A stretch of DNA of 63,879 nt, the filler included, from Octopus bimaculoides (lineage: Eukaryota), in the NCBI RefSeq assembly GCF_001194135.2. It is 5 parts of 5 records of this genome, joined end to end, with 100 filler letters (N's around TTAATTAATTAA, not from the genome) between each part and the next. Parts side by side here need not be neighbours in the genome. Positions count along the whole stretch, not along the records: positions 30,327 to 55,981 come from NC_068996.1; 4 more parts are not named here. One strand, 5' to 3'. How positions within the stretch are numbered: position 1 is the first letter of the stretch; every line of letters starts with the position of its first letter. The notes under the pieces are model-generated. The model was not told where the DNA came from and ran no database searches. It saw only the letters and a program-made list of their open reading frames with translations. The translations under genes and the position numbers were made by a program. Positions 30,326-54,350 of this stretch are shown in pieces.

Positions 30326-31345
30326 NACTGTTGGAAAACAGTTTATAGCAGAGACTCCAGCTAAGAAGATCTGAAGAAGGAATTGTAATTCCGAAATATC
30401 ATCGGACTATAGATAACCAAATTACAACAAAGGGACAACAAAACATCCAGGTAGACGATACAAAGAAAACAAGCTCAGGTCATTCGGGGTTTTCTTTCAT
30501 CAGTCAAGTTTCAGATTATCTTTGCAAATTCGGCTAATTGTACTCGAGATTGCTCCAATCTGGCCAACCCCAAGGAAAAACTAAGCTAAGAGCATTAGAT
30601 TCCTTGGAAGAAAGCAACGAATGTGTACAAAAATAAGGACGGAAAGAAAATGGACAATGTTACACAAATACAATAAAAATAATAACAGGACATAACAACA
30701 GATGTTTTTTTACTAAGGACGAATTAAATTAAGCTGGCATGTGTGGAAGTAAAGCCTTACGGAAGGGATACAATGTTTCACAGACACAGGGAGGAATATC
30801 GATGTTGCACGCACAACGGCCGGCTAAGAAAGAAAGATCACGCTTGGCCGAACGCCGGTCACATGCGAAGAGAAGAGAGAGAAGTAGAGGCAGAGAGACA
30901 AAAGAATTAAGGTGGGGCGAGAAAAAATGACAGGGACACATTGAAGTGAAAAGAGGAGGGAAAGTGAGCAAGAAGAGAAAGCAAGGAAATGTGAGAGAAG
31001 GGGAACGAAAGAACGAAGAGTGGAATGAACGAATAAGGGTGAAAGGGCTGATAGACAGTACAAGTTGTTCTGTCCTGTTATTATTTTTATTGTATTTGTG
31101 TAACATTGTTCGTTTTTTTCCGTCCTTGTTTTGTATTCATTCGCTGCTTTCTTCCAAGGAATGTAATGCTCTTAGCTTAATTTTTCCTTGGGGCTGACCA
31201 GATTCGAGCAATATCGAGAATAACCAGCCGAAATTGCAAAGATAATCTGGATCTCGACCGATGAAAAAAAACTCGCAATGACCTGAGCTTGTTTTCTTTG
31301 TATCGTCTATCTGGATATTTTGTTGTCCCTTTCTTGTATAACCTG
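30326..31345. mobile_element. Repeat family A: convergent inverted pair (about 30420-30712 + and 31063-31345 -)
   Basis: aagggacaacaaaacatccaggtagacgatacaaagaaaacaagctcaggtcatt...aataacaggacataacaac recurs as a diverged reverse complement. Confidence 0.8.
30368..30403 (+). ncRNA. Minimal type-I hammerhead at the head of repeat family A
   Basis: GAU-CUGAAGA-A-GGAAU(UGUA)AUUCC-GAA-AUAU-C/AUC: 3-bp stem I, 5-bp stem II, palindromic AUAU stem III, AUC triplet. Confidence 0.75.
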
Positions 31346-31630: not shown

Positions 31631-32783
31631 TATATATATTACATTATATTATATTATATCATATTATATTATGACATCACTGGTATCGGCCTTTGTCTTT
31701 TCCTTAGATAACATCGGTGGCACGGAGAGGGGTGACTGATATGCATGGGCGACTGCTGGTCTTCCATAAACAGCCTTGCCTAGATTTGTACCTAGGAGGA
31801 GAACTTTCTAGATGCAATCCCATGATCATTCATGACCGAAGGGGGTCTTTACCCTTTATTCTGTATTGTATTATATTATATTATATTACATTATATTGTA
31901 TTATAATATATATGCAAACATTTTTTTTCAGAATGAGATAAAAAAACCAGCACTGTGAAGATTTTAAAACATTTATAAATAGAAGGTCTTACACCTGTTT
32001 CCTAGGTAAAGAGGACAACAAACGTTAAGGCAAGGCAAACATCTCAAGTCATATACATTATTATTATTGCAAAAAAGATTCAAAGTCTTGCGGCTGTTTC
32101 TGGAATAACCCAGAGTATGGGATATTCCGTCACCGGAGACAAATATGGAAAATGAGAAGGGTATAGATTAATGAAATGACTACATAGAGGACCGGAGTGA
32201 AGGAATAAGGGGATGAAGAAAGAGAAGAAAAAAGCCTAAAAGTTCACAGTTCAACTTTCCGATCTTGTAGAAATAAGTCTATAAGTTCTTAGGTGCAATC
32301 TTGCGTAAATCTATGCACTTAACTGGTTGTTATATTATTACTGTTATTTCCGTTCAGAACAGATTTAAACATTTGAATAGACCATTTTTCTTTATCTTTC
32401 TTCCAGCCTCACTTATGAATTAAAAATTATCTCTACCATAAAAATATAAACAAGTTACAGAATATCGGTACGCCTGGCAAACCATGATGTTTAAGTGCAT
32501 GCGGATTGGTCAAAAAGGTATTCTAAAAGTTAAATTTGTTGGAGCGTTTTAACAGGTACTAAAGTTGTCAAGAACTTAACTGCTAATTAATCATATTTGA
32601 AATCTGTTGATTGCACTATGTATGAAAGCAGTAATTTAGCTTTATGACCATTACAAATTATTTTTTAAATGTTAAGATACCATAATAATAAATGTGAAAA
32701 ACAGACAATGTCTTAACTTTATTCAACTTAGATATTATTCTATACACTTTCACACAAATTCGAAATAAAATATACATATATAC

Positions 32784-32946
32784 AGGTGCAAGAGTGGCTG
32801 TGTAGCCAGTAGCTTGCTTACCAGCCACCCGGTTCCAGGTTCAGTCCCACTGCGTAGCAACTTGGGCAAGTGTCTTCTACTATAGCCTCGGGCCGACCAA
32901 AGCTTTGTGAGTGGATCTGGTGGACGGAAACTGAAGGTAGCCCGCT
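32784..32946 (+). mobile_element. SINE family 1, 5' part
   Basis: caggtgcaagagtggctgtgtagccagtagc...gaaactgaagg. Confidence 0.8.
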
Positions 32947-36211: not shown

Positions 36212-36612
36212 AGTTTCCGTCTGCCAAATTCGCTCACAAGGCTCTGGTCGGCCGGAGGCTATAGTTGAAGACGCTTGCCCATGGTGCCACGCAGTGGGAC
36301 TGAACCCGGAACCATGTGGCTGATAAGCAAGCTACTTACCACACAGCCACTCCTGCGCCTATTATATATATATTTATGTGCTTGTGCCTGTATTTGTCCC
36401 CCCACTCACACACACACACATATCGCTCGACAACCGATTTTGGTGTGTTTACGTCACTGTAACATTAGTGGTTCGGTAAAAGATACCGATGAAATAAGTA
36501 CTAGGTTTACATAGAATAAGTCTTGGGGTCGATTTGTTTGACTAAAACCTCTTAGGGGCTGTTCCAGCATGGCCACAGTCACCTGACTGTAATAACTAAA
36601 AGAATAAAAGAA
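36212..36612. mobile_element. SINE family 1: head on - (36212-36361) and tail on + (36362-36612), i.e. an internally inverted copy
   Basis: Family 1 head and tail sequences in opposite orientation, joined at a TA run. Confidence 0.7.
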
Positions 36613-37477: not shown

Positions 37478-38872
37478 TACATTTGTGCTCTTATTTTATG
37501 CGAGCAACATTCTTGGAACCTTTCCAATGTTGGATCTGGAACATGCATTGGATCATGAACTGCATATATGGATGCATGGCTATACAGTTACATGTATATG
37601 TAAATGTATATGTATGCGTATATTTGTGTGTACATGTAACACCCGCTCCAAGTATTGAAACCACAATCTTACGATCATACATAAAACACTAACCACTAAA
37701 TCATGCGTCTCCACCTTACACACATCACATACACACACACGCACACATATATATACATACACTAACATGCGTGAATACACATAGACACACACACGCACGC
37801 GCAAACATACAGACATGTGTGTAGGGGCGTGTGTTCATGTGTGATTGTGTACGCACGCATGTTCCTGTATATACATACATACATATATATACTCACATAC
37901 CATGCATGTTTGTTTAAATGGTATTGTACATGTGTATATATATTTATGTATATATACATGTATGTATGTATGTATGTATATATATGTGTGTGTATGTAAA
38001 AATATACTTATTTATGTATGTATGCATGCATGTATGTATGCATGTATGTATGTATGTATGTATGTATGCATGTATGCATGTATGTTTGTATGTATGCATG
38101 TATGTATGTATGTATACATGTATGTATGTCTGTACGTATGTATATAAGTATTCTTGTATGTATGCATACATATAGAGAAGAATGTATTTATAGAAGAGAT
38201 CTAGACGACTATCGAGATTATAATATCGCCTCTACATCCCTTATCACGTCGATTATCCTTGATAAATATCATGTTGCCGAAAAATCAGTGAGACTCAGGC
38301 ATATTAGGGATTACATGAGTGTAAGCGCTATAAATAAAGTCTTTTTTATTATTATTAATTTGATCCGACAGGTATGTTGCATCGAATACATATCAAATTC
38401 TATCAACATCTTATAGCAGAAAGTCGTAATTCAGAAAGCACAACCAGCTAGCTTATATTATATATATATATATTTATTTATTTATTTATTTTTGTCTCTG
38501 ATTAAACAAAACAAGGAATGTTGTAAACATGTTGATCCGTCATTAGAGTAGTTGATGACTGCTGGAGCTGGATTTTAGATTGTGCTTTTTGATCCATGCC
38601 TCGTTATGTTTCCAGATCAGTATCTTAGAAAAAACAGTAGGTAAGTATTGCGGGGATAAAAGTGTTATTTAACTACAATAATTATGTAAGCAAGATGCTC
38701 TATTTTTAATGTAAATAATGTTCTTTCTTCACTAAACCTTTCGGAAAGCAGGTTGAAAAGAAAAAGTGAAATCCATGGTAATGAAAATCGTGGACAACGA
38801 TAGATTCGTACAAGTGTATATATACAAAACTTTAAATAGCATACAGACCCTACTTTAAGCGTTGAATCTCTT

Positions 38873-39095
38873 TACTATTTTACTTGTTTCAGTCATTTGA
38901 CTGTGGCCATGCTGGAGCACCGCCTTTCGTCGATCAAATCAACACCAGGACTTATTCTTTGTAACCTTAGTACTTATTCTATCGGTCTCTTTTGCCGAAC
39001 CGCTAAGTTACGGGGACGTAAACACAACAGCATCGGTTGTCAAGCGATGTTGGGGGGGGGGGACAAAGACAGACACATAAACACATACACGCACA
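38873..39095 (-). mobile_element. SINE family 1, 3' half
   Basis: Family 1 tail sequence. Confidence 0.8.
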
Positions 39096-39539
39096 AATAT
39101 ATATATATATATATATANNNNNNNNNNNNNNNNNNNNNNNNNNNNNNNNNNNNNNNNNNNNNNNNNNNNNNNNNNNNNNNNNNNNNNNNNNNNNNNNNNN
39201 NNNNNNNNNNNNNNNNNNNNNNNNNNNNNNNNNNNNNNNNNNNNNNNNNNNNNNNNNNNNNNNNNNNNNNNNNNNNNNNNNNNNNNNNNNNNNNNNNNNN
39301 NNNNNNNNNNNNNNNNNNNNNNNNNNNNNNNNNNNNNNNNNNNNNNNNNNNNNNNNNNNNNNNNNNNNNNNNNNNNNNNNNNNNNNNNNNNNNNNNNNNN
39401 NNNNNNNNNNNNNNNNTCTGATATCCTTTCTTTTTAATGTAAACCCCTCCGTTGTTTTCTAATTTGTACCAATACCTTTCCTACCTCTATTGTAGGCCCT
39501 TCTGTCCTATAAAGAAACGATAATTATTATTGCTGCTGC

Positions 39540-40735: not shown

Positions 40736-41103
40736 AACAACCTTAATTCAGTTCTATATTTAAGAGATGAGGAATTATTTACATTATTTACATTATTTAC
40801 ATTCGACGGATACAAATGATATGTGAGCATATGCATATATATATATATATACATATATGTACATACCTACATCTACATGTATATATAGATGCATATCCGG
40901 ATACAGGACGTCAAAAGACGAGGACAAAAAAGGAACGGGAACATAAACAAAGCAAAAAAAGAAAAGACGAACACACACACACATATATATTATATGAATA
41001 TATCATAGCTATCGGCTCCTTTTTCTTTTTACATTATGGGCATGCGCATGTACCTAATGACAAAGGGTACCGTCGAATGTAAATAATGTAAACAACCTTA
41101 ATT
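40736..41103. mobile_element. Family D composite insertion: target duplication, inverted D tail, captured segment, D tail piece, target duplication
   Basis: 13-bp direct repeat aacaaccttaatt (40736-40748, 41091-41103); 23-bp inverted arms (40787-40809, 41070-41092); interior 40810-41072 is the reverse complement of 48253-48548. Confidence 0.85.
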
Positions 41104-43667: not shown

Positions 43668-45360
43668 GGGTGAAGACCCCTTTCTTCAGGACATTTGGAA
43701 AAAGTGTAAGAATTCATCAGTCAATTAGAGTTGTAAGATCTGAAAAGGATCTGAATTATTTCAGCTAAGCACAGCTTACATGTTTTGGATCCGTTAATAT
43801 ATGGTATGGATTTTTCAACTATTTTCCACTTTATCGTATATGGTATGGCGTTCGATTTCAAATCCCATACGTGGCTAGCCAACTTAGAAGCTTTACTTTT
43901 GTCCTTGTATAGGAAGAAAGATATGTGACTAGCATAGCGACTTTTGAGTTCGCCTTCACATACTCTGATATATATCTTCTTATCGGTTGTGCTATTATCT
44001 AGTGTTGCGGTAACTTCTACCTCATATACGACGGATTTAATCATACATTTCTGATAAAGTAGACAGGTTCCTGGATCTCGACATTTACAACTGGGCATGT
44101 GCTCTTGGTGTTGCTCTCGTGTAATGAATGATATTCTTGATATTGGGTCAGAAGCTATATGATAATTCCACTGAGTGCCTGTTAAATATTTTCCTGCGCC
44201 TGTGCTTTTCCAGAAGTTGTTTGCCAAGGAGAGATAGGCATCTTTTACCTATATTGGTTTTTACATTAAGAGAGGAGGAAGGGGTGAACCAAATTATATT
44301 CCTCGGTCTATTTTTAGGTCTATTATTGTTATTCTAATTAATATTAGAGGGTTTATGTATTAGTTTATCCTTAAAGCCACTATTGGCTAGAGCATTGTTG
44401 TGGTGGACAGCTGCCCTCTCAAAAATTTCTTTAGATGAAGAGAGCTTAGAAACTTTGTTATTAACGTTAGCAATCAGGTTTTTTTAATATGACAGGAGGG
44501 TGACAAGAGTGTTTATTTATATAGGAAAGTTAGTCGTTGGGCCCATTGTAAGGCTTATGGAGGTGAGAGCTCAGATCAGGGGAAACATCTAAAAAAATCA
44601 ACGTTAGACAGATTAGTAGCGACTGTGATTTTAAGGCAAATTGACTGAAGGTACAAGTAAGTTGTTTCCTAAATTTATCAAGGGTTTAGGCGCAGAAGTG
44701 ACTGTATGGTAAGTAGCTTGCTTACCAGCCACATGGTTCCGGGTTCAGTCCCACTGCATGGCACTTTGAGCAAATGTCTTCTGCTATAGCCTCGGGCCGA
44801 CCAAAGACTTGTGAGTGGATTTGGTAGACGGAAACTGAAAGAAGCCCATCGTGTATATGTATATATATGTATATATGTATGTGTGTTTGTGTGTCTGTGT
44901 TTGTCCCCCCACCATCACTTGACAACCGATGCTGGTGTGCTTACGTCCCCGTGACTTAGCGGTTCGGCACAAAAAGACTGATAGAATAAGTACTAGGCTT
45001 ACAAAGAATAAGTCCTGGGGTCAATTTGTTCGACTAAAATGCGGTTCTCCAGTATGGCCGCAGTCAAATGACTGAAACAACTAAAAGAGTAAGGGTGTGA
45101 CCATCACAGCCATAGAAAATCCCAATCCGTCGTCTTGGTATAGACCATGGTTGTGAGATAGGTACTTAGATCTCAATGTGTTTAATTCAAAGCAACTCAC
45201 AAGTTTGCAGATGTTAGAACTATCATATGACCCCGTTGATACATCGAACAATTCATCATTATCCGACATTTTTTTAACCCATACTAAGCTCTTACTAAAC
45301 AGTAGTGTTTTCCTTGCATGTCTGATAAAATCCAGGTCTATAGGGTCTATACCAACATAT
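43665..45360 (-). mobile_element. Penelope-like retroelement, Naiad-type, 5'-truncated: RT, linker and GIY-YIG endonuclease, with a hammerhead relic at the 3' end
   Basis: FIRHARKTLLF...WVKK...FDVSTGSYDSSNICKLV...GLYQDDGL (RT); HSCHPP, RNIIWFTP...NVKTNIGK (linker); SCKCRDPGTC...VVYEV...KIYIRVCEGELKSRYASH...WKIV...CKLCLAE (EN). Frameshifted and split by a SINE. Relic CUGAAGA-AA-GGGG(ucuuca)CCCC-GAua at 43665-43690. Confidence 0.85.
44686..45090 (+). mobile_element. SINE family 1 inserted in the Naiad RT
   Basis: Direct repeat aagggt at 44680-44685 and 45091-45096. Confidence 0.88.
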
Positions 45361-45699: not shown

Positions 45700-46210
45700 G
45701 TTAAGGCCACTATTGGTTTCATGTTGAGAATATGAGGAAAACATCCTAGTGTCATAACAGTTTTTCAAGCCGATCACGCGGAGAAAAGTGTTCGCCTCCA
45801 TTTTGGAAAATACTGTTTTGTGTGCTAAGGAGAAACAACTCGTATAGAAGGCCAAGATCACGGACCCGACGAAATAGCCAAGACGTATATCAGAATGACA
45901 GGCAACTCGTTCGAGGAAAGGTATACACAAACATCTGGCGTCATTCAGAGACAAAATTTTTTTTTAAATACATGCAACATCCCAGTCAAATATATGGACA
46001 TTGAAACATGGTGGATTAAGCAACCCCCAGATAGAATGGAAAATTATTGCTAAAACCAAAAAATACAGAGGACTGGATACCAAATGTGAACTCTTTATTT
46101 CTGAAAAATTAAACATTATACAATCAACCGATAACATCTTAAATATTGGGGAGGAAACACCTCCCTGGATACACAAGCAATATTTTACACTCAAATATTT
46201 CAAAGAGTCA
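45700..46210 (+). mobile_element. Second, distinct Penelope-like GIY-YIG endonuclease remnant
   Basis: KTYIRMTGNSFEERY and PQIEWKIIAKTKKYRGLDTKCELFISEKLNII...NILNIGEE match the same EN layout, but the sequence is unlike the neighbouring copy. Confidence 0.65.
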
Positions 46211-46790
46211 CTATCTGCAACGGTAATCCCATCAGGTTAGCCCCTCTCTCGAACACGAAATCTGAACACAAATAGCAACAAAGACCACACAGAAGAAATG
46301 GGCCTCAATGAAGAACTACTTCAGCACACACAAGTATAAGAACACCATGCCCAGAACAAAAACAAAATAATGTCAACAAATTGATAACACAATAATTTGC
46401 CTAAAAGACAAATCTAAAGGCGACAAACATCCAAAAGACGCAACTCAGAAATAATGTCTCTTGATACATTAATTAATTGTTTTATTCACGTGAATTTACG
46501 AGAATCTCTGCAATTTAAAGGTGACTTTGTTTTCTAAACTGGAGGCGAAAATCTTTCTGCATGTGATCAGCTTGAAAAATTGTTACGTGACTAAGATATT
46601 TTCCTACTTTTCTAAACTAATGGTCGTCTTAATCCAGAAATAAATAAACATTTATACATATTATATACACACACACATATGCGTGTGTGTGTATGTGTGT
46701 CTATTCTCGTAATACCAGCGCCAAGCGGTGTTTAGATGTAAGTGAACTTAAGGTTAGTTACAATATGTTTATAACATATCTCAACTGCCG

Positions 46791-46895: not shown

Positions 46896-48329
46896 TAGCG
46901 GGTGAAATATGTCTCAAACATATTTTAACTAAACCTATGTTCCGCATATATATATATATGTAAATATAATATATGTAAATATAATATATATNNNNNNNNN
47001 NNNNNNNNNNNNNNNNNNNNNNNNNNNNNNNNNNNNNNNNNNNNNNNNNNNNNNNNNNNNNNNNNNNNNNNNNNNNNNNNNNNNNNNNNNNNNNNNNNNN
47101 NNNNNNNNNNNNNNNNNNNNNNNNNNNNNNNNNNNNNNNNNNNNNNNNNNNNNNNNNNNNNNNNNNNNNNNNNNNNNNNNNNNNNNNNNNNNNNNNNNNN
47201 NNNNNNNNNNNNNNNNNNNNNNNNNNNNNNNNNNNNNNNNNNNNNNNNNNNNNNNNNNNNNNNNNNNNNNNNNNNNNNNNNNNNNNNNNNNNNNNNNNNN
47301 NNNNNNNNNNNNNNNNNNNNNNNNNNNNNNNNNNNNNNNNNNNNNNNNNNNNNNNNNNNNNNNNNNNNNNNNNNNNNNNNNNNNNNNNNNNNNNNNNNNN
47401 NNNNNNNNNNNNNNNNNNNNNNNNNNNNNNNNNNNNNNNNNNNNNNNNNNNNNNNNNNNNNNNNNNNNNNNNNNNNNNNNNNNNNNNNNNNNNNNNNNNN
47501 NNNNNNNNNNNNNNNNNNNNNNNNNNNNNNNNNNNNNNNNNNNNNNNNNNNNNNNNNNNNNNNNNNNNNNNNNNNNNNNNNNNNNNNNNNNNNNNNNNNN
47601 NNNNNNNNNNNNNNNNNNNNNNNNNNNNNNNNNNNNNNNNNNNNNNNNNNNNNNNNNNNNNNNNNNNNNNNNNNNNNNNNNNNNNNNNNNNNNNNNNNNN
47701 NNNNNNNNNNNNNNNNNNNNNNNNNNNNNNNNNNNNNNNNNNNNNNNNNNNNNNNNNNNNNNNNNNNNNNNNNNNNNNNNNNNNNNNNNNNNNNNNNNNN
47801 NNNNNNNNNNNNNNNNNNNNNNNNNNNNNNNNTATATATCAGGTTACAGTGTTTCATCAAAAAGGAGTATTCTAATTGTCATCAAATGTAACTAAGGTGT
47901 TAAGAAACACCTACATTGCCACGTACCTGCTGTATTCTTGGGATATTCTTTTGTTTTTAAAATTGCTTCACTTGATGATTACGGCTTTTTGCAATACAGT
48001 AATGTTCTCATTCTTCTATGAAAAAATGTGTAAGAAACAGTTGTTATTCATTTGAGTGAATACACACACACCCGTACATATACACACACACATGTACAAA
48101 CACCACACACAGCCACACACAGCCACACACACACACTCACACACACGGCGCTCAGTTATATAAATGAAATATATGGAAGAAGTAGTCGAGTACTACAGCT
48201 GTTTCAAACAGCACCGGGATTTATGTAACATTAAAAATAATTCATAATTACCCGGTACCCTTTGTCATTAGGTACATGCGCATGTCCATAATGTAAAAAG
48301 AAAAAGGAGCCGATAGCTATGACATATTC

Positions 48330-48378
<49 letters not shown>

Positions 48379-49191
48379 CGTTTTTTTTTTTTGCTTTCTT
48401 TATGTTCCCGTTCCTTTTTTGCCCTCGTTTTTTGACGTCCTGTATCCGGATATGCATCTATATATACATGTAGATGTAGGTATGTACATATATGTATATA
48501 TATATATATCTATATATATATATGCATATGCTCACATATCATTTGTATTATATATATATGTACACATTTATGCTTGTGAGTCACTCTACAGCTTTATTGC
48601 ACCTGCACTGCAAACATGAAGTGCAATTTTAACTTCAGAATTCACTTACTACGTTCTTTTCTGTGTTTCTTTACATTCTTTTATCTTTTATCTTCTGCTT
48701 GTTTCAGTTATTTCACTGCGGCCATGCTGGGGCACCACCTCGAAGGGTTTTAGCTCAGCAGCTCGACCCCCNNNNNNNNNNNNNNNNNNNNNNNNNNNNN
48801 NNNNNNNNNNNNNNNNNNNNNNNNNNNNNNNNNNNNNNNNNNNNNNNNNNNNNNNNNNNNNNNNNNNNNNNNNNNNNNNNNNNNNNNNNNNNNNNNNNNN
48901 NNNNNNNNNNNNNNNNNNNNNNNNNNNNNNNNNNNNNNNNNNNNNNNNNNNNNNNNNNNNNNNNNNNNNNNNNNNNNNNNNNNNNNNNNNNNNNNNNNNN
49001 NNNNNNNNNNNNNNNNNNNNNNNNNNNNNNNNNNNNNNNNNNNNNNNNNNNNNNNNNNNNNNNNNNNNNNNNNNNNNNNNNNNNNNNNNNNNNNNNNNNN
49101 NNNNNNNNNNNNNNNCGTATTACATGTTAGTTGCCCCGTTGGTGACGTCCTGTACACATATATGCAGTTATACATACATATATACATGCAT

Positions 49192-49227
<36 letters not shown>

Positions 49228-49397
49228 GTATATTATATTATATATCATTTATTATTTTATTGAACGCGACGCATCCATTTCCCAGTAAGTATAAATATAT
49301 ATATATAAATGTATGCATGGATGTATATATGTAGACACATACACACAAACACACATACAAACACACACACACACACATACATATATAAATATATATA

Positions 49398-49700
49398 TAA
49401 CAGTGGCGGTGTGTTAAAGAAGTTTGCTTTCCAACCATATGGTTCCGGGTTCAGTCCCACTGCGTGGCACCTTGGGCAAGTTTCTTTTCTTATAGCCTCG
49501 AGCTGACCGACGTTTTGTGTGTGGTTTTGGTAGGCGGAAACCTAAAGAAGCTCGACAGTCGGCGTTGGTTTGTTTAAGTCTCCATAACTTAGTGGTTCAG
49601 CAAAAGAAACCGATACAATAAGTAACAGGTTTTTAAAAAAGTACTGGGGTCGATTCATTCTACTAAGTTTTCTCAAGCCGGTGCAAAAGCATGAAAGTAG
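49398..49700 (+). mobile_element. SINE family 1, internally deleted
   Basis: Head and tail segments of family 1. Confidence 0.7.
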
Positions 49701-53057: not shown

Positions 53058-53275
53058 TGGAGGACGAGGAGGACGACGACGAGGAGGACGACGACGAGGA
53101 GGACGACGACGAGGAGGAGGAGGAGGAGGAAGACGTGGAGGAGGAGGAAGACGTGGAGGAGGAGGAAGACGTGGAGGAGGAGGAAGACGTGGAGGACGAG
53201 GAGGAGGAGGAGGTCGACGACGACGAGGAGGAGAACGAGGAGGAGGAAGACGTGGAGGACGAGGACGAGGATAGC
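53058..53275. repeat. GAG/GAC-rich low-complexity repeat
   Basis: gaggaggacgacgac and gaggaggaagacgtg units next to a gap. Confidence 0.8.
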
Positions 53276-53527
53276 AGAAATGGGGAGAGAGAAAAAGAAG
53301 CATGTAAAATGGATTACAGCCACTGAACAAGAGAAAAAAACGTTATTTACATGCAAAATAAATTTAAATAAAATAATCATAATAAAGAATAGAATAGAAT
53401 ATATATCTTTCATTTTTTTTGTGTGTGTGTGTTGGCTGAGTGTTGAAACTTTTGGATAAAATAAGAGTCGAAACCGAAGAAGGCACGGCGGCAAATATTT
53501 GGTGGCAAGAATTTCACATATTCTTTT

Positions 53528-53673
53528 ATTCTTTTATCTGTTCTATATTTAAGAGAAGAGGAATTATTTACATTATTTACATTATTTACATTTGACGGAT
53601 ATTTGTCCTTATCTTGTTTGTTGTTAACACAACGTTTCGACTGATATACCCTCCAGCCTTATTATTACTAATA

Positions 53674-53704
<31 letters not shown>

Positions 53705-53868
53705 TATAATAATAGTAACATCGTTAGGAATGAGAACCCAGGTTCGAAATTTCCCCAAAACACCTAATGAAGGCTGGAGGGTATATCAGCCGAAACGGGT
53801 TAATAACAAACAAAATGAGGACAAATATCCGTCAAATGTAAATAATGTAAATAATTCTTTTATCTGTT
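53528..53868. mobile_element. Family D head-to-head inverted pair around a (TAA)n spacer, inside a 15-bp target duplication
   Basis: Direct repeat attcttttatctgtt (53528-53542, 53854-53868); D on - at 53543-53660, D on + at 53726-53853. Confidence 0.85.
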
Positions 53869-54134
53869 TCAGTCTTTTTCGACTGCGGCCATGCTGGAGC
53901 AACGCCTTGGAGTGTTTGAGTCGAATAAATCGACCCCAGTACTTATTCGTTGTAAGCCTAGTACTTATTCTATCGGTATCTGTTTGTCGAAGCGCTAAGA
54001 AACGGGGACGTAAACACATCAACAACGGTTGTCAAGTCGAGGTGGGAGGTACAAACACAGACACAAAGACACACATATGCACACACACACATGCACACGC
54101 ACTCTTTCTCTGTCTGTCTGTCTGTCTGTCTCTG

Positions 54135-54187
<53 letters not shown>

Positions 54188-54350
54188 TATATACATACGA
54201 TGGGCTTCTTTCAGTTTCCATCTACCAAATCCATTCACAATGCTTTGGTTGACCCGAGGTGATAGTAGAAGACACTTGCCCAAGGTGCCTCGTAGTGGGA
54301 CTGAACCCGGGACCATGTGGTTGGGAAGCAAGCTGCTTACCACGCTTTTG
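53860..54350 (-). mobile_element. SINE family 1 (its 3' tail is the target of the family D pair)
   Basis: Family 1 sequence with an expanded internal microsatellite. Confidence 0.85.

What the first reader, a model, noticed from the sequence alone, without database searches (positions are those of the whole stretch)
40736..41103. Ribozyme-family element captured a 260-bp piece of neighbouring genome inside a single TSD-flanked insertion
Seen: a 13-bp direct repeat aacaaccttaatt brackets three parts. These are [family D 3' tail, inverted, 40749-40812], [40810-41072, the reverse complement of 48253-48548, differing by a few substitutions and microsatellite length] and [a 23-nt piece of the same D tail in the other orientation]. 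Both junctions show 3-nt microhomology (ATA, CCG). The 48.3-kb copy has no element arms or duplication, so it is the likely donor. Inference: one nick-primed integration in which a Penelope-type RT switched template from element RNA to nearby DNA or pre-mRNA and back. That would be a local sequence-capture mechanism driven by a hammerhead-bearing non-autonomous element. I am not aware of this being described in cephalopods.
Basis: partly seen in the sequence, partly recalled or inferred. Interest (0 to 1): 0.85.

Follow-up and report, generated by a model that had tools for sequence, protein, structure and literature searches.

The report
Retroelement insertion holding a copied neighbouring segment
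A small Penelope-style retroelement insertion in an octopus genome encloses a 263-bp copy of DNA from about 7.5 kb away, a real but single and largely precedented example of a mobile element picking up nearby sequence by template switching.

Summary
A perfect 13-bp duplication (40736-40748, 41091-41103) brackets an inverted 61-64-nt D tail, a 263-bp filler and a 21-23-nt D tail in the other orientation. The filler is the reverse complement of 48253-48548 (256 matches, 5 substitutions, microsatellite indels). Both junctions have 3-nt microhomology (ATA, CCG).

New here:
- A second D insertion (53538-53857, 15-bp duplication) has the same two-armed inverted build but no foreign filler.
- Across three genomic D copies plus one annotated D-derived peptide, D has two discrete 3' ends about 20-40 nt apart. 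With both target ends extended, this is the published signature of Penelope-like elements.
- With the filler removed, the insert is a perfect palindrome with a 3-nt spacer, so the filler sits at the turn-around point.
- No hammerhead is detectable. D carries a conserved CUAAUGA, not CUGANGA.

I favour capture by template jump during integration (about 0.45). Later repair at the palindrome centre that copied a nearby template (about 0.3) cannot be excluded. Host DNA caught between Penelope terminal repeats, and local capture between inverted repeats of DNA transposons, are both published. Genome-wide copy number of the filler and the contiguity of the two loci across three assembly gaps could not be tested.

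The parts
40736..40748 (.). Left copy of the 13-bp target-site duplication AACAACCTTAATT. The top-strand primer ends in ...ATT.
   Evidence: (family D5). Chance about 2e-6.
40749..40812 (-). Left arm: D 3' region in antisense orientation, starting at the long 3' end (CAGTTCTATATTTAAGAG...). The last 3 nt (ATA, 40810-40812) are shared with the filler.
   Evidence: 95-97% identity to 53538-53601. Alignment A2.
40810..41072 (-). Filler: a 263-bp copy of 48253-48548 in reverse orientation. Its first 3 nt (ATA) and last 3 nt (CCG) are microhomology with D.
   Evidence: 256 matches, 5 substitutions, microsatellite-length indels. There is no other copy in the piece.
41070..41092 (+). Right arm: D 3' region in sense orientation, ending at the short 3' end within the 9-mer repeats. 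The last 2 nt overlap the duplication.
   Evidence: 21 nt perfectly complementary to 40789-40809 (pair I2). 95.7% identity to 53829-53851.
41091..41103 (.). Right copy of the 13-bp target-site duplication.
48253..48548 (+). Donor segment (296 bp), with no D arms and no flanking duplication. One end abuts a (TA)n run.
53528..53868 (.). Second D insertion, used as the reference for the family. The 15-bp duplication ATTCTTTTATCTGTT lies at 53528-53542 and 53854-53868. The long-tailed antisense arm starts at 53538 if CTGTT belongs to the element, or at 53543 if it belongs to the duplication, and runs to about 53664. The interior is an (AAT)n-rich part of D. The sense arm runs from about 53765 to 53853-53857 (its last bases overlap the duplication) and ends at the short site. 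It sits in the 5' part of another SINE-like repeat.
   Evidence: (pairs I1-I3, I20).

Best explanation
D is a short non-autonomous retroelement of octopus genomes that is inserted by a Penelope-like (PLE) machinery.

Proposed sequence of events at 40.7 kb:
1. A staggered cut in AT-rich DNA gave two 3' ends 13 bp apart.
2. Both ends primed reverse transcription on the 3' region of D RNA. One started at the long 3' end and gave the left arm (61-64 nt). The other started at the short internal site about 30-40 nt upstream and gave the right arm (21-24 nt).
3. Such insertions normally close by the first cDNA turning back or jumping onto the other cDNA. That gives a palindromic inverted junction.
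4. Here the growing 3' end (...CGGATA) first paired through 3 nt with a stray single-stranded template from the neighbourhood, either nascent RNA or exposed DNA of the 48.3-kb locus.
5. It copied about 263-296 nt, then re-paired through CCG/CGG at the normal turn-around point and completed the insert.

Shown:
- The anatomy and the single target duplication.
- The identity of the donor and the microhomologies.
- The filler sitting exactly at the symmetry centre.
- The two discrete 3' ends of D.

Inferred:
- That a PLE enzyme did this.
- That the capture happened during integration.
- The nature of the donor template (RNA or DNA).
For: Two-armed anatomy:
- Both D insertions in the piece carry the same 3' region inverted at both ends, one arm with an extra roughly 20-40 nt.
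- Independent copies end at the same two places. Short ends: 40.7 right arm, 53.5 right arm, and a Logan contig L002. Long ends: 40.7 left arm, 53.5 left arm, and the O. bimaculoides peptide P0151.

Match to published PLE features:
- PLE insertions show an inverted 5'-truncated copy plus a one-sided 30-40-bp tail (PMC8557442).
- A purified PLE protein cleaves and extends both strands and starts reverse transcription at two adjacent internal sites that define the tail (PMC11167929).
- Duplications of 13 and 10-15 bp fit the variable duplications of PLEs.
- Octopus genomes hold recently active Penelope families (PMC13282606).

Position of the filler:
- With the filler removed, the insert reads ...ATTTACATTCGACGG-ATA-CCGTCGAATGTAAAT..., a perfect palindrome with a 3-nt spacer.
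- Palindromes at inverted junctions are a noted PLE trait, attributed to self-priming and template jumps (PMC3846280).
- The filler lies exactly at that point.
- The palindrome arms are only 21-24 bp. From general knowledge, not tested here, that is short for a fragile site, which favours capture at formation.

Other support:
- At least 3 nt of microhomology at both junctions has a chance of about 0.004.
- Both arms of this insert share the C variant (CATTCGACGG), whereas both arms at 53.5 kb have T.
- Host DNA between PLE repeats inside target duplications is documented.
Against: - No PLE reverse transcriptase or endonuclease gene was found in the piece, so the PLE assignment rests on architecture only.
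- D has no canonical hammerhead.
- A donor only 7.5 kb away is the classic mark of DNA-repair copying. Reverse-transcriptase chimeras known from LINE-1 usually capture abundant RNAs from anywhere (my knowledge).
- Nothing dates the capture relative to the insertion. The perfect duplication, the identical arms and the 1.9% filler-donor divergence fit both orders of events.
- This is one example. Three further D copies showed no filler: one complete insertion in the window, one contig that begins inside D, and one known only from a peptide.
- The distance and orientation of the donor depend on scaffolding across three gaps.
Confidence: 0.45

Rival explanations
1. Two events. A plain palindromic D insertion formed first. 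Later a break or a stalled replication fork at its centre was repaired by synthesis that switched, through microhomology, to a nearby template 7.5 kb away and back. This is gap filling or FoSTeS/MMBIR (fork stalling and template switching, or microhomology-mediated break-induced replication), as for single-copy 'Pack-TIR' captures.
For: The published signature matches. Single-copy captures between inverted repeats of DNA transposons in animals arise without transposition. 57% lie within 15 kb of the parental copy, microhomology has a median of 2 bp, the gaps are small and the breakpoints are internal (PMC8277862). Here the donor is about 7.5 kb away and in inverted orientation, 3 nt of microhomology sits at each junction, at most 3 nt of D was lost, and the filler lies at the palindrome centre.
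Against: The palindrome arms are only 21-24 bp. From general knowledge this is below the length at which inverted repeats are usually fragile, so a break exactly at the centre (within 3 nt) is not strongly expected. There is no independent sign of a later event, and the duplication and arms are intact.
Confidence: 0.3
2. The filler is a member of a dispersed repeat family, or a mobile element of its own, and the nearby 'donor' is just another copy. There was no local capture.
For: Genome-wide copy number could not be measured. The region is very repeat-rich.
Against: - There are only two copies in the piece and none in 22 kb of other octopus DNA.
- The pair differs by 1.9% in substitutions, while copies of the SINE-like families in the same piece are 80-89% identical.
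- The 48.3-kb copy has no terminal repeats or duplication.
- The homology stops exactly at the D arms with 3-nt overlaps, which is unexpected for an independent insertion.
Confidence: 0.08
3. D is an ordinary LINE-dependent SINE, and the inverted arms come from LINE-type twin priming.
For: D has a box-B-like GGTTCGAAATT and a tail of 9-mer repeats (TGTAAATAA)n, as some LINE or SINE tails have. Twin priming makes inversions.
Against: In twin priming the inverted part comes from a different, upstream part of the RNA (my knowledge). Here both arms are the same 3' region. The outer ends fall into two discrete classes in independent copies. ARAGORN finds no tRNA-like gene.
Confidence: 0.07
4. Assembly artefact: a chimeric short-read contig joined D fragments to a copy of the 48.3-kb sequence.
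For: The assembly is a gap-rich draft. The insert lies in a 1.1-kb contig. PLE structures are known to trouble short-read assemblies.
Against: The junction overlaps are only 3 nt, too short for a graph misjoin. The filler differs from the donor by 5 substitutions and several indels, so it comes from distinct reads. A chimera would not produce a perfect 13-bp duplication and symmetric arms.
Confidence: 0.05
5. D is a DNA transposon or MITE with terminal inverted repeats, and this is a classical Pack-TIR.
For: The insert has inverted termini and flanking duplications.
Against: The duplication length is not demonstrably fixed (13 bp here, 10-15 bp at 53.5 kb). The termini are unequal by about 20-40 nt. 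The 'repeat' is the 3' end of a longer directional unit that also occurs with a single arm visible (L002).
Confidence: 0.03

Closest known systems
Penelope-like element insertions with an inverted 5'-truncated copy and a one-sided 30-40-bp tail (PMC8557442; PMC11167929)
   Same: Inverted copies of the same 3' region lie at both ends. One end is about 20-40 nt longer. The 3' ends fall into two discrete classes. The target duplication is variable and the target is AT-rich, with one primer ending in ATT.
   Different: D has no reverse-transcriptase or endonuclease reading frame and no canonical hammerhead. Its arms are tiny (64 and 24 nt). No autonomous partner was identified.
Host DNA captured between Penelope terminal repeats within target duplications in the rotifer Adineta vaga (PMC3846280)
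   Same: Unrelated host sequence is framed by PLE terminal sequences and a target duplication. Palindromes occur at inverted junctions. Template jumps and self-priming were proposed.
   Different: In the rotifer, whole genes or spacers lie between mostly direct full-length repeats, read as mobilisation in trans, and no local donor or junction microhomology was reported in the passages read. Here the filler lies between minimal inverted arms, with a donor 7.5 kb away and 3-nt overlaps.
Single-copy Pack-TIRs: transposition-independent gap filling in DNA transposons (PMC8277862)
   Same: The filler lies between inverted repeats, the parental copy is within 15 kb, junctions have short microhomology, and there is little loss of element sequence.
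   Different: The carrier here is a retroelement insertion with unequal ends, not a cut-and-paste transposon.
LINE-1 twin priming and LINE-1 template-switch chimeras (my knowledge; not checked in the library)
   Same: Both target ends prime, and the reverse transcriptase changes template in mid-synthesis.
   Different: L1 inversions join different parts of one RNA. L1 chimeras capture abundant RNAs such as U6, not a neighbouring locus.
Non-LTR retrozymes of animals (PMC7229834; bioRxiv 10.64898/2026.07.22.740005)
   Same: They are short non-autonomous elements thought to depend on PLEs.
   Different: Retrozymes are tandem repeats with active type I hammerheads. D is dispersed, not tandem, and lacks a canonical hammerhead.

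Membership tests
Penelope-like element (PLE) type insertion | An inverted 5'-truncated copy gives inverted repeats at the ends of the insert | tested here: met
   Both D insertions: 40749-40812 against 41070-41092, and 53538-53664 against 53765-53857.
Penelope-like element (PLE) type insertion | An optional 30-40-bp 'tail' at one end only, reflecting two adjacent reverse-transcription start sites | tested here: met
   The long arm exceeds the short arm by 29-41 nt at 40.7 kb and by 18-34 nt at 53.5 kb. The range comes from the register of the 9-mer repeats. Three short and three long ends from independent copies cluster at the same two places.
Penelope-like element (PLE) type insertion | A target-site duplication of variable length | tested here: met
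   13 bp and 10-15 bp.
Penelope-like element (PLE) type insertion | A reading frame for a PLE reverse transcriptase with a GIY-YIG endonuclease, in the element or in an autonomous partner | tested here: not met
   D is non-coding. No reverse-transcriptase frame was seen among the ORFs of the piece. The one real ORF (43721-44227, minus strand) has no Pfam match and no significant structural match. A partner elsewhere in the genome cannot be tested here. The literature reports active Penelope families in Octopus.
Penelope-like element (PLE) type insertion | A hammerhead ribozyme in the terminal repeat (canonical clades; absent in Naiad and Chlamys) | tested here: not met
   See the hammerhead rows. 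This feature does not define all PLE clades.
Hammerhead ribozyme (Rfam Hammerhead_1, _3, _II, HH9, HH10) | A match to a covariance model | tested here: not met
   No hammerhead hit at E<=1 over the piece or at E<=10 over 53520-53880.
Hammerhead ribozyme (Rfam Hammerhead_1, _3, _II, HH9, HH10) | The conserved core CUGANGA ... GAAA with helices I-III | tested here: not met
   D has CUAAUGA-A-GGCUG...CAGCC-GAAAC...CCGUC. The G5 position is A in both copies that cover it (53.5 right arm and L002), and there is an extra A before helix II. I found no helix I. Helix II and III differences are not compensatory, and L002 breaks helix III.
Non-LTR retrozyme | Tandem arrays of units that each carry a type I hammerhead | tested here: not met
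   D copies are single and dispersed, with no hammerhead.
Pack-TIR / MITE (cut-and-paste DNA transposon) | Equal terminal inverted repeats and a duplication of fixed length | tested here: not met
   The termini differ by about 20-40 nt. The duplications are 13 bp and 10-15 bp.
tRNA-derived SINE | A tRNA-like head with A and B boxes | tested here: inconclusive
   There is a box-B-like GGTTCGAAATT only. ARAGORN finds nothing. All copies seen are 5'-truncated or cut off.
Templated local capture by microhomology-guided template switching | A donor in cis, a filler that is a near-exact copy, and short overlaps at both junctions | tested here: met
   The cis relation depends on scaffolding.

The most novel reading that the evidence does not exclude
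Penelope-type integration complexes in octopus may recurrently pick up nearby nascent RNA or exposed DNA at the turn-around point of double-ended reverse transcription. That would make small 'Pack-PLE' inserts that scatter inverted copies of local sequence. Within a shared transcript, each such copy and its donor would form a long-range duplex of about 260 bp. That is the kind of substrate used by the RNA-editing enzymes that are so active in cephalopods.
Probability: 0.15. Interest if true: 0.65.

Novelty: new member of a known kind. Interest (0 to 1): 0.4.

Why it matters
How Penelope-like elements finish integration is still unsolved. Their inverted junctions, palindromes and 'tails' have only recently been tied to biochemistry.

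A clean insert in which a foreign, locally derived template sits exactly at the turn-around point is a natural 'trapped intermediate'. It shows that the 3' end at that step is free to pair by 3 nt with whatever single strand is near.

If the pattern recurs, it would be a source of short local inverted duplications in a genome where intramolecular RNA duplexes have known consequences. As a single case it is a useful anecdote, not a mechanism.

Tried and rejected
Attempts to obtain independent data:
- Exact look-ups of ORFs spanning the filler/arm junction, the 53.5-kb copy and the neighbouring ORF were not on record.
- The O. bimaculoides D-derived peptide P0151 could not be traced to DNA.
- Scans of the metagenome and prokaryote-genome collections with a 24-nt D motif gave 0 hits.
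- A full-text search for D sequence strings found nothing relevant.
- I planned to sample more octopus DNA through homologues of the neighbouring ORF. Only one 20.5-kb O. vulgaris locus (no D, no filler) and short Logan contigs were reachable.

Readings considered and dropped:
- Both arms might end at a hammerhead cleavage site. The arms retain 5-8 nt upstream of the only GUC site that could be one, and the hammerhead is not supported anyway.
- The 5-7 filler/donor differences might show an RNA-editing signature. Two to four A-to-G changes on one strand are offset by two G-to-A changes, so there is no statistical power.
- A 10-nt D-tail-like patch in the donor (48286-48295, 41028-41037) might have guided the switch. 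Its strand and position do not fit either junction.
- The ORF at 43721-44227 might be a PLE endonuclease. There is a motif-level GIY-YIG resemblance only, not confirmed.

Full report
**What is there**

- AACAACCTTAATT occurs at 40736-40748 and 41091-41103.
- The left part of the insert is CAGTTCTATATTTAAGAGATGAGGAATTATTTACATTATTTACATTATTTACATTCGACGG(ATA), at 40749-40812.
- The middle is 263 bp that a local alignment places on the reverse complement of 48253-48548. It has 256 matches, 5 substitutions and 37 gap columns, nearly all microsatellite-length differences.
- The right part is (CCG)TCGAATGTAAATAATGTA, at 41070-41090, perfectly complementary to 40789-40809.
- The chance of a 13-bp duplication at these edges is about 2e-6.
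- At least 3 nt of junction microhomology arises at 6.5% of random junctions between these sequences, so about 0.4% for both.

The piece is a gap-rich draft. The insert lies in a 1091-bp contig and the donor in a 939-bp contig, with three N gaps between them. The 7.5-kb distance and the relative orientation are therefore scaffold-level statements.

**Organism**

Repeat families of the piece match an Octopus vulgaris chromosome (OX597833.1, locus L001) at 80-91%. A 51-residue 'protein' translated from a D copy is annotated in O. bimaculoides (P0151). The window is therefore from an octopus.

**What D is**

The D-tail motif occurs four times in the window, as two inverted pairs. The second pair, at 53538-53857, is a complete insertion flanked by ATTCTTTTATCTGTT (53528-53542 and 53854-53868). 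It sits in the 5' part of another SINE-like repeat.

This second insertion has the same build:
- An antisense arm starts at C(T/A)GTTCTATATTTAAGAG...
- A sense arm ends earlier, inside the (TGTAAATAA) repeats.
- Between them lies more of D itself: an (AAT)n-rich stretch, a box-B-like GGTTCGAAATT and a conserved block.

A third copy came from a Logan contig (L002). It ends at the short site. The O. bimaculoides peptide ends at the long site. Aligning all of them gives three short ends within about 5 nt of each other, and three long ends at ...AAATATAGAAC(A/T)G. The two classes lie about 20-40 nt apart, depending on the 9-mer register.

**Comparison with the literature**

- PLE insertions are described as having an inverted 5'-truncated copy at one side and a 30-40-bp 'tail' at one end only (PMC8557442).
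- A purified PLE protein cleaves and extends both DNA strands, unlike LINE enzymes. It starts reverse transcription at two adjacent internal sites whose spacing is the tail (PMC11167929).
- Rotifer Penelope copies show palindromes at the inverted junction, host DNA captured between terminal repeats inside target duplications, and proposed self-priming and template jumps (PMC3846280).
- Octopus vulgaris has recently active Penelope families and hundreds of unclassified SINE families (PMC13282606).

D therefore behaves like a non-autonomous passenger of a PLE. This rests on architecture. No PLE gene was found in the piece.

**The hammerhead claim**

- Rfam finds no hammerhead in the piece at E<=1, or in the D copy at E<=10. 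The listed hits are microsatellite-driven microRNA false positives.
- A scan for CUGANGA + helix II + GAAA finds one unrelated chance site.
- By eye, D has CUAAUGA-A-GGCUG...CAGCC-GAAAC...CCGUC.
- The A at the catalytic G5 position is present in both copies that cover it.
- I could find no helix I.
- The differences among three copies in helices II and III are not compensatory, and L002 breaks helix III.

D may descend from a hammerhead-bearing repeat, but it is not a canonical hammerhead. The Naiad clade of PLEs, present in cephalopods, also lacks hammerheads, so this does not weaken the PLE reading.

**Where the filler sits**

If the filler is removed, the insert reads ...ATTTACATTCGACGG-ATA-CCGTCGAATGTAAAT.... 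This is a perfect palindrome with a 3-nt spacer. Both arms therefore stop at the same D position to within 3 nt, and the filler lies exactly at the centre of symmetry.

The 53.5-kb copy has a 12-bp palindrome with a 4-nt spacer at its centre (pair I20). That centre lies in low-complexity (AAT)n sequence, so I give it little weight.

Two independent cDNAs stopping within 3 nt of each other would be a coincidence of a few per cent. A turn-back (self-priming or a jump at the end of the RNA:DNA hybrid) gives that symmetry by construction.

**Mechanism**

I favour a single complex integration, with these steps:
1. A staggered cut was made.
2. Both ends primed on D RNA at the two sites.
3. At the step where the first cDNA normally turns back, its 3' end (...CGGATA) paired by 3 nt with a nearby single strand of the 48.3-kb locus.
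4. It copied 263-296 nt.
5. It re-paired by CCG/CGG at the usual point.

The main rival is a later event. Single-copy captures between the inverted repeats of DNA transposons arise by transposition-independent gap filling. Their parental copies are mostly within 15 kb, their microhomology has a median of 2 bp, and their gaps are small (PMC8277862). That description fits this locus equally well.

The following do not separate the two readings: the perfect duplication, the identical arms, the shared C variant of both arms, and the 1.9% filler-donor divergence.

Two considerations pull in opposite directions:
- The palindrome arms are short (21-24 bp), which I take from general knowledge to be poorly fragile. 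This tips me towards capture at formation.
- The closeness of the donor tips the other way.

I put the two at about 0.45 and 0.30.

**Other rivals**

- Dispersed repeat. There are only two copies in the piece and none in 22 kb of other octopus DNA. The pair differs by 1.9% in substitutions, against 80-89% identity among SINE-like copies nearby. The homology stops at the arms with 3-nt overlaps. Genome-wide copy number remains untested.
- Misassembly. 3-nt overlaps, distinct substitutions and a perfect duplication argue against it.
- LINE-type twin priming. Both arms are the same 3' region and the ends fall into two classes, which does not fit.
- DNA transposon. The ends are unequal and the duplication length is not demonstrably fixed, which does not fit.

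**Novelty and score**

The components are all known: PLE inverted insertions with tails, host DNA within PLE repeats and duplications, microhomology-guided template switching, and local capture between inverted repeats.

What is new:
- The host lineage. I found no cephalopod report in the held library.
- The minimal size of the carrier.
- The clean placement of a locally derived filler at the turn-around point.

It is one example, and the three other D copies I could see have no filler. I rate it a new member of a known kind, with interest 0.4.

**Limits**

- No cephalopod genome could be searched by DNA.

Noticed in passing
window 53528-53868: A second complete D insertion with a 15-bp duplication. 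It has inverted arms that are 91.5% identical over 94 nt (substitutions plus a 3-nt indel) and an (AAT)n-rich centre. It is inserted into the 5' part of another SINE-like repeat (the ...GCGGCCATGCTGG... family). The divergence between the arms is higher than expected if both were copied from one RNA.
   Followed up: yes
window 43721-44227 (-), and a fragment at 46001-46240 (+): A real but unnamed ORF with 2812 homologues at E<=1e-3 in the 1.84-billion-protein library. The closest, at 59% identity, is a hypothetical protein of Octopus vulgaris. Its conserved pattern is CNCR..CPL.G.C ... VY.A.V ... YIG.T...FK.RY.NH ... C.LC..EK, which looks GIY-YIG-like by motif. It has no Pfam match and no PDB sequence match. 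The AlphaFold model has pLDDT 82.5, but no structural match is significant (T4 EndoII only at E=1.3). It is probably the protein of an uncharacterised, widespread mobile element.
   Followed up: partly
window 30423-30699 and 31064-31338: Another inverted repeat pair (277 bp, 88.8% identical) around a roughly 365-bp centre. It belongs to a different family from D. Parts of it recur in the O. vulgaris locus L001 (11365-11545). It could be a foldback, a MITE, or another two-armed retroelement insertion. The left flank is cut by the edge of the piece.
   Followed up: no
window 41028-41037 and 48286-48295: The donor, and hence the filler, contains a 10-nt match to the D tail repeat (TTTACATTAT / ATAATGTAAA), within a 27-nt stretch that is 74% complementary to the right arm (pair I16). 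The rough chance is 0.05-0.2. Its strand and position do not explain either junction.
   Followed up: partly
window 40810-41072 with 48253-48548: The filler and its donor are an inverted pair about 7.5 kb apart. If both lie in one transcript they would form a duplex of about 260 bp, a potential RNA-editing substrate in an octopus. Whether the region is transcribed is unknown.
   Followed up: no
window 32768-32943, 36212-36377, 44687-45092, 49377-49551, 54172-54343: Five copies of one SINE-like family (80-89% identical to each other, 80-91% to copies in O. vulgaris L001). A second family with GCGGCCATGCTGG lies at 38871-39116, 48700-48771 and 53858-54088. Together they show how repeat-dense the region is.
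   Followed up: no
window 53058-53326 (+): An open frame rich in Glu and Asp (EDEEDDDEE...SRNGEREKEACKMDYSH, then a stop) starts directly after an N gap. It could be the last exon of an acidic protein, or only a GAG/GAC microsatellite.
   Followed up: no
whole piece 30327-55981: All 132 Rfam matches at E<=1 are below their gathering scores. Nearly all are microRNA families (mir-297, mir-3149, mir-466 and others), plus a few snoRNA families, and they lie on (TG/TA/CATA)n microsatellites. They are false positives.
   Followed up: yes
window 53745-53835; L002 75-165: D carries a conserved block, CUAAUGAAGGCUGGAGGGUA(U/A)AUCA(G/A)CCGAAAC, that resembles a hammerhead core with G5 replaced by A. It may be a relic of a ribozyme-bearing ancestor or a protein-binding site for the mobilising enzyme.
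   Followed up: partly
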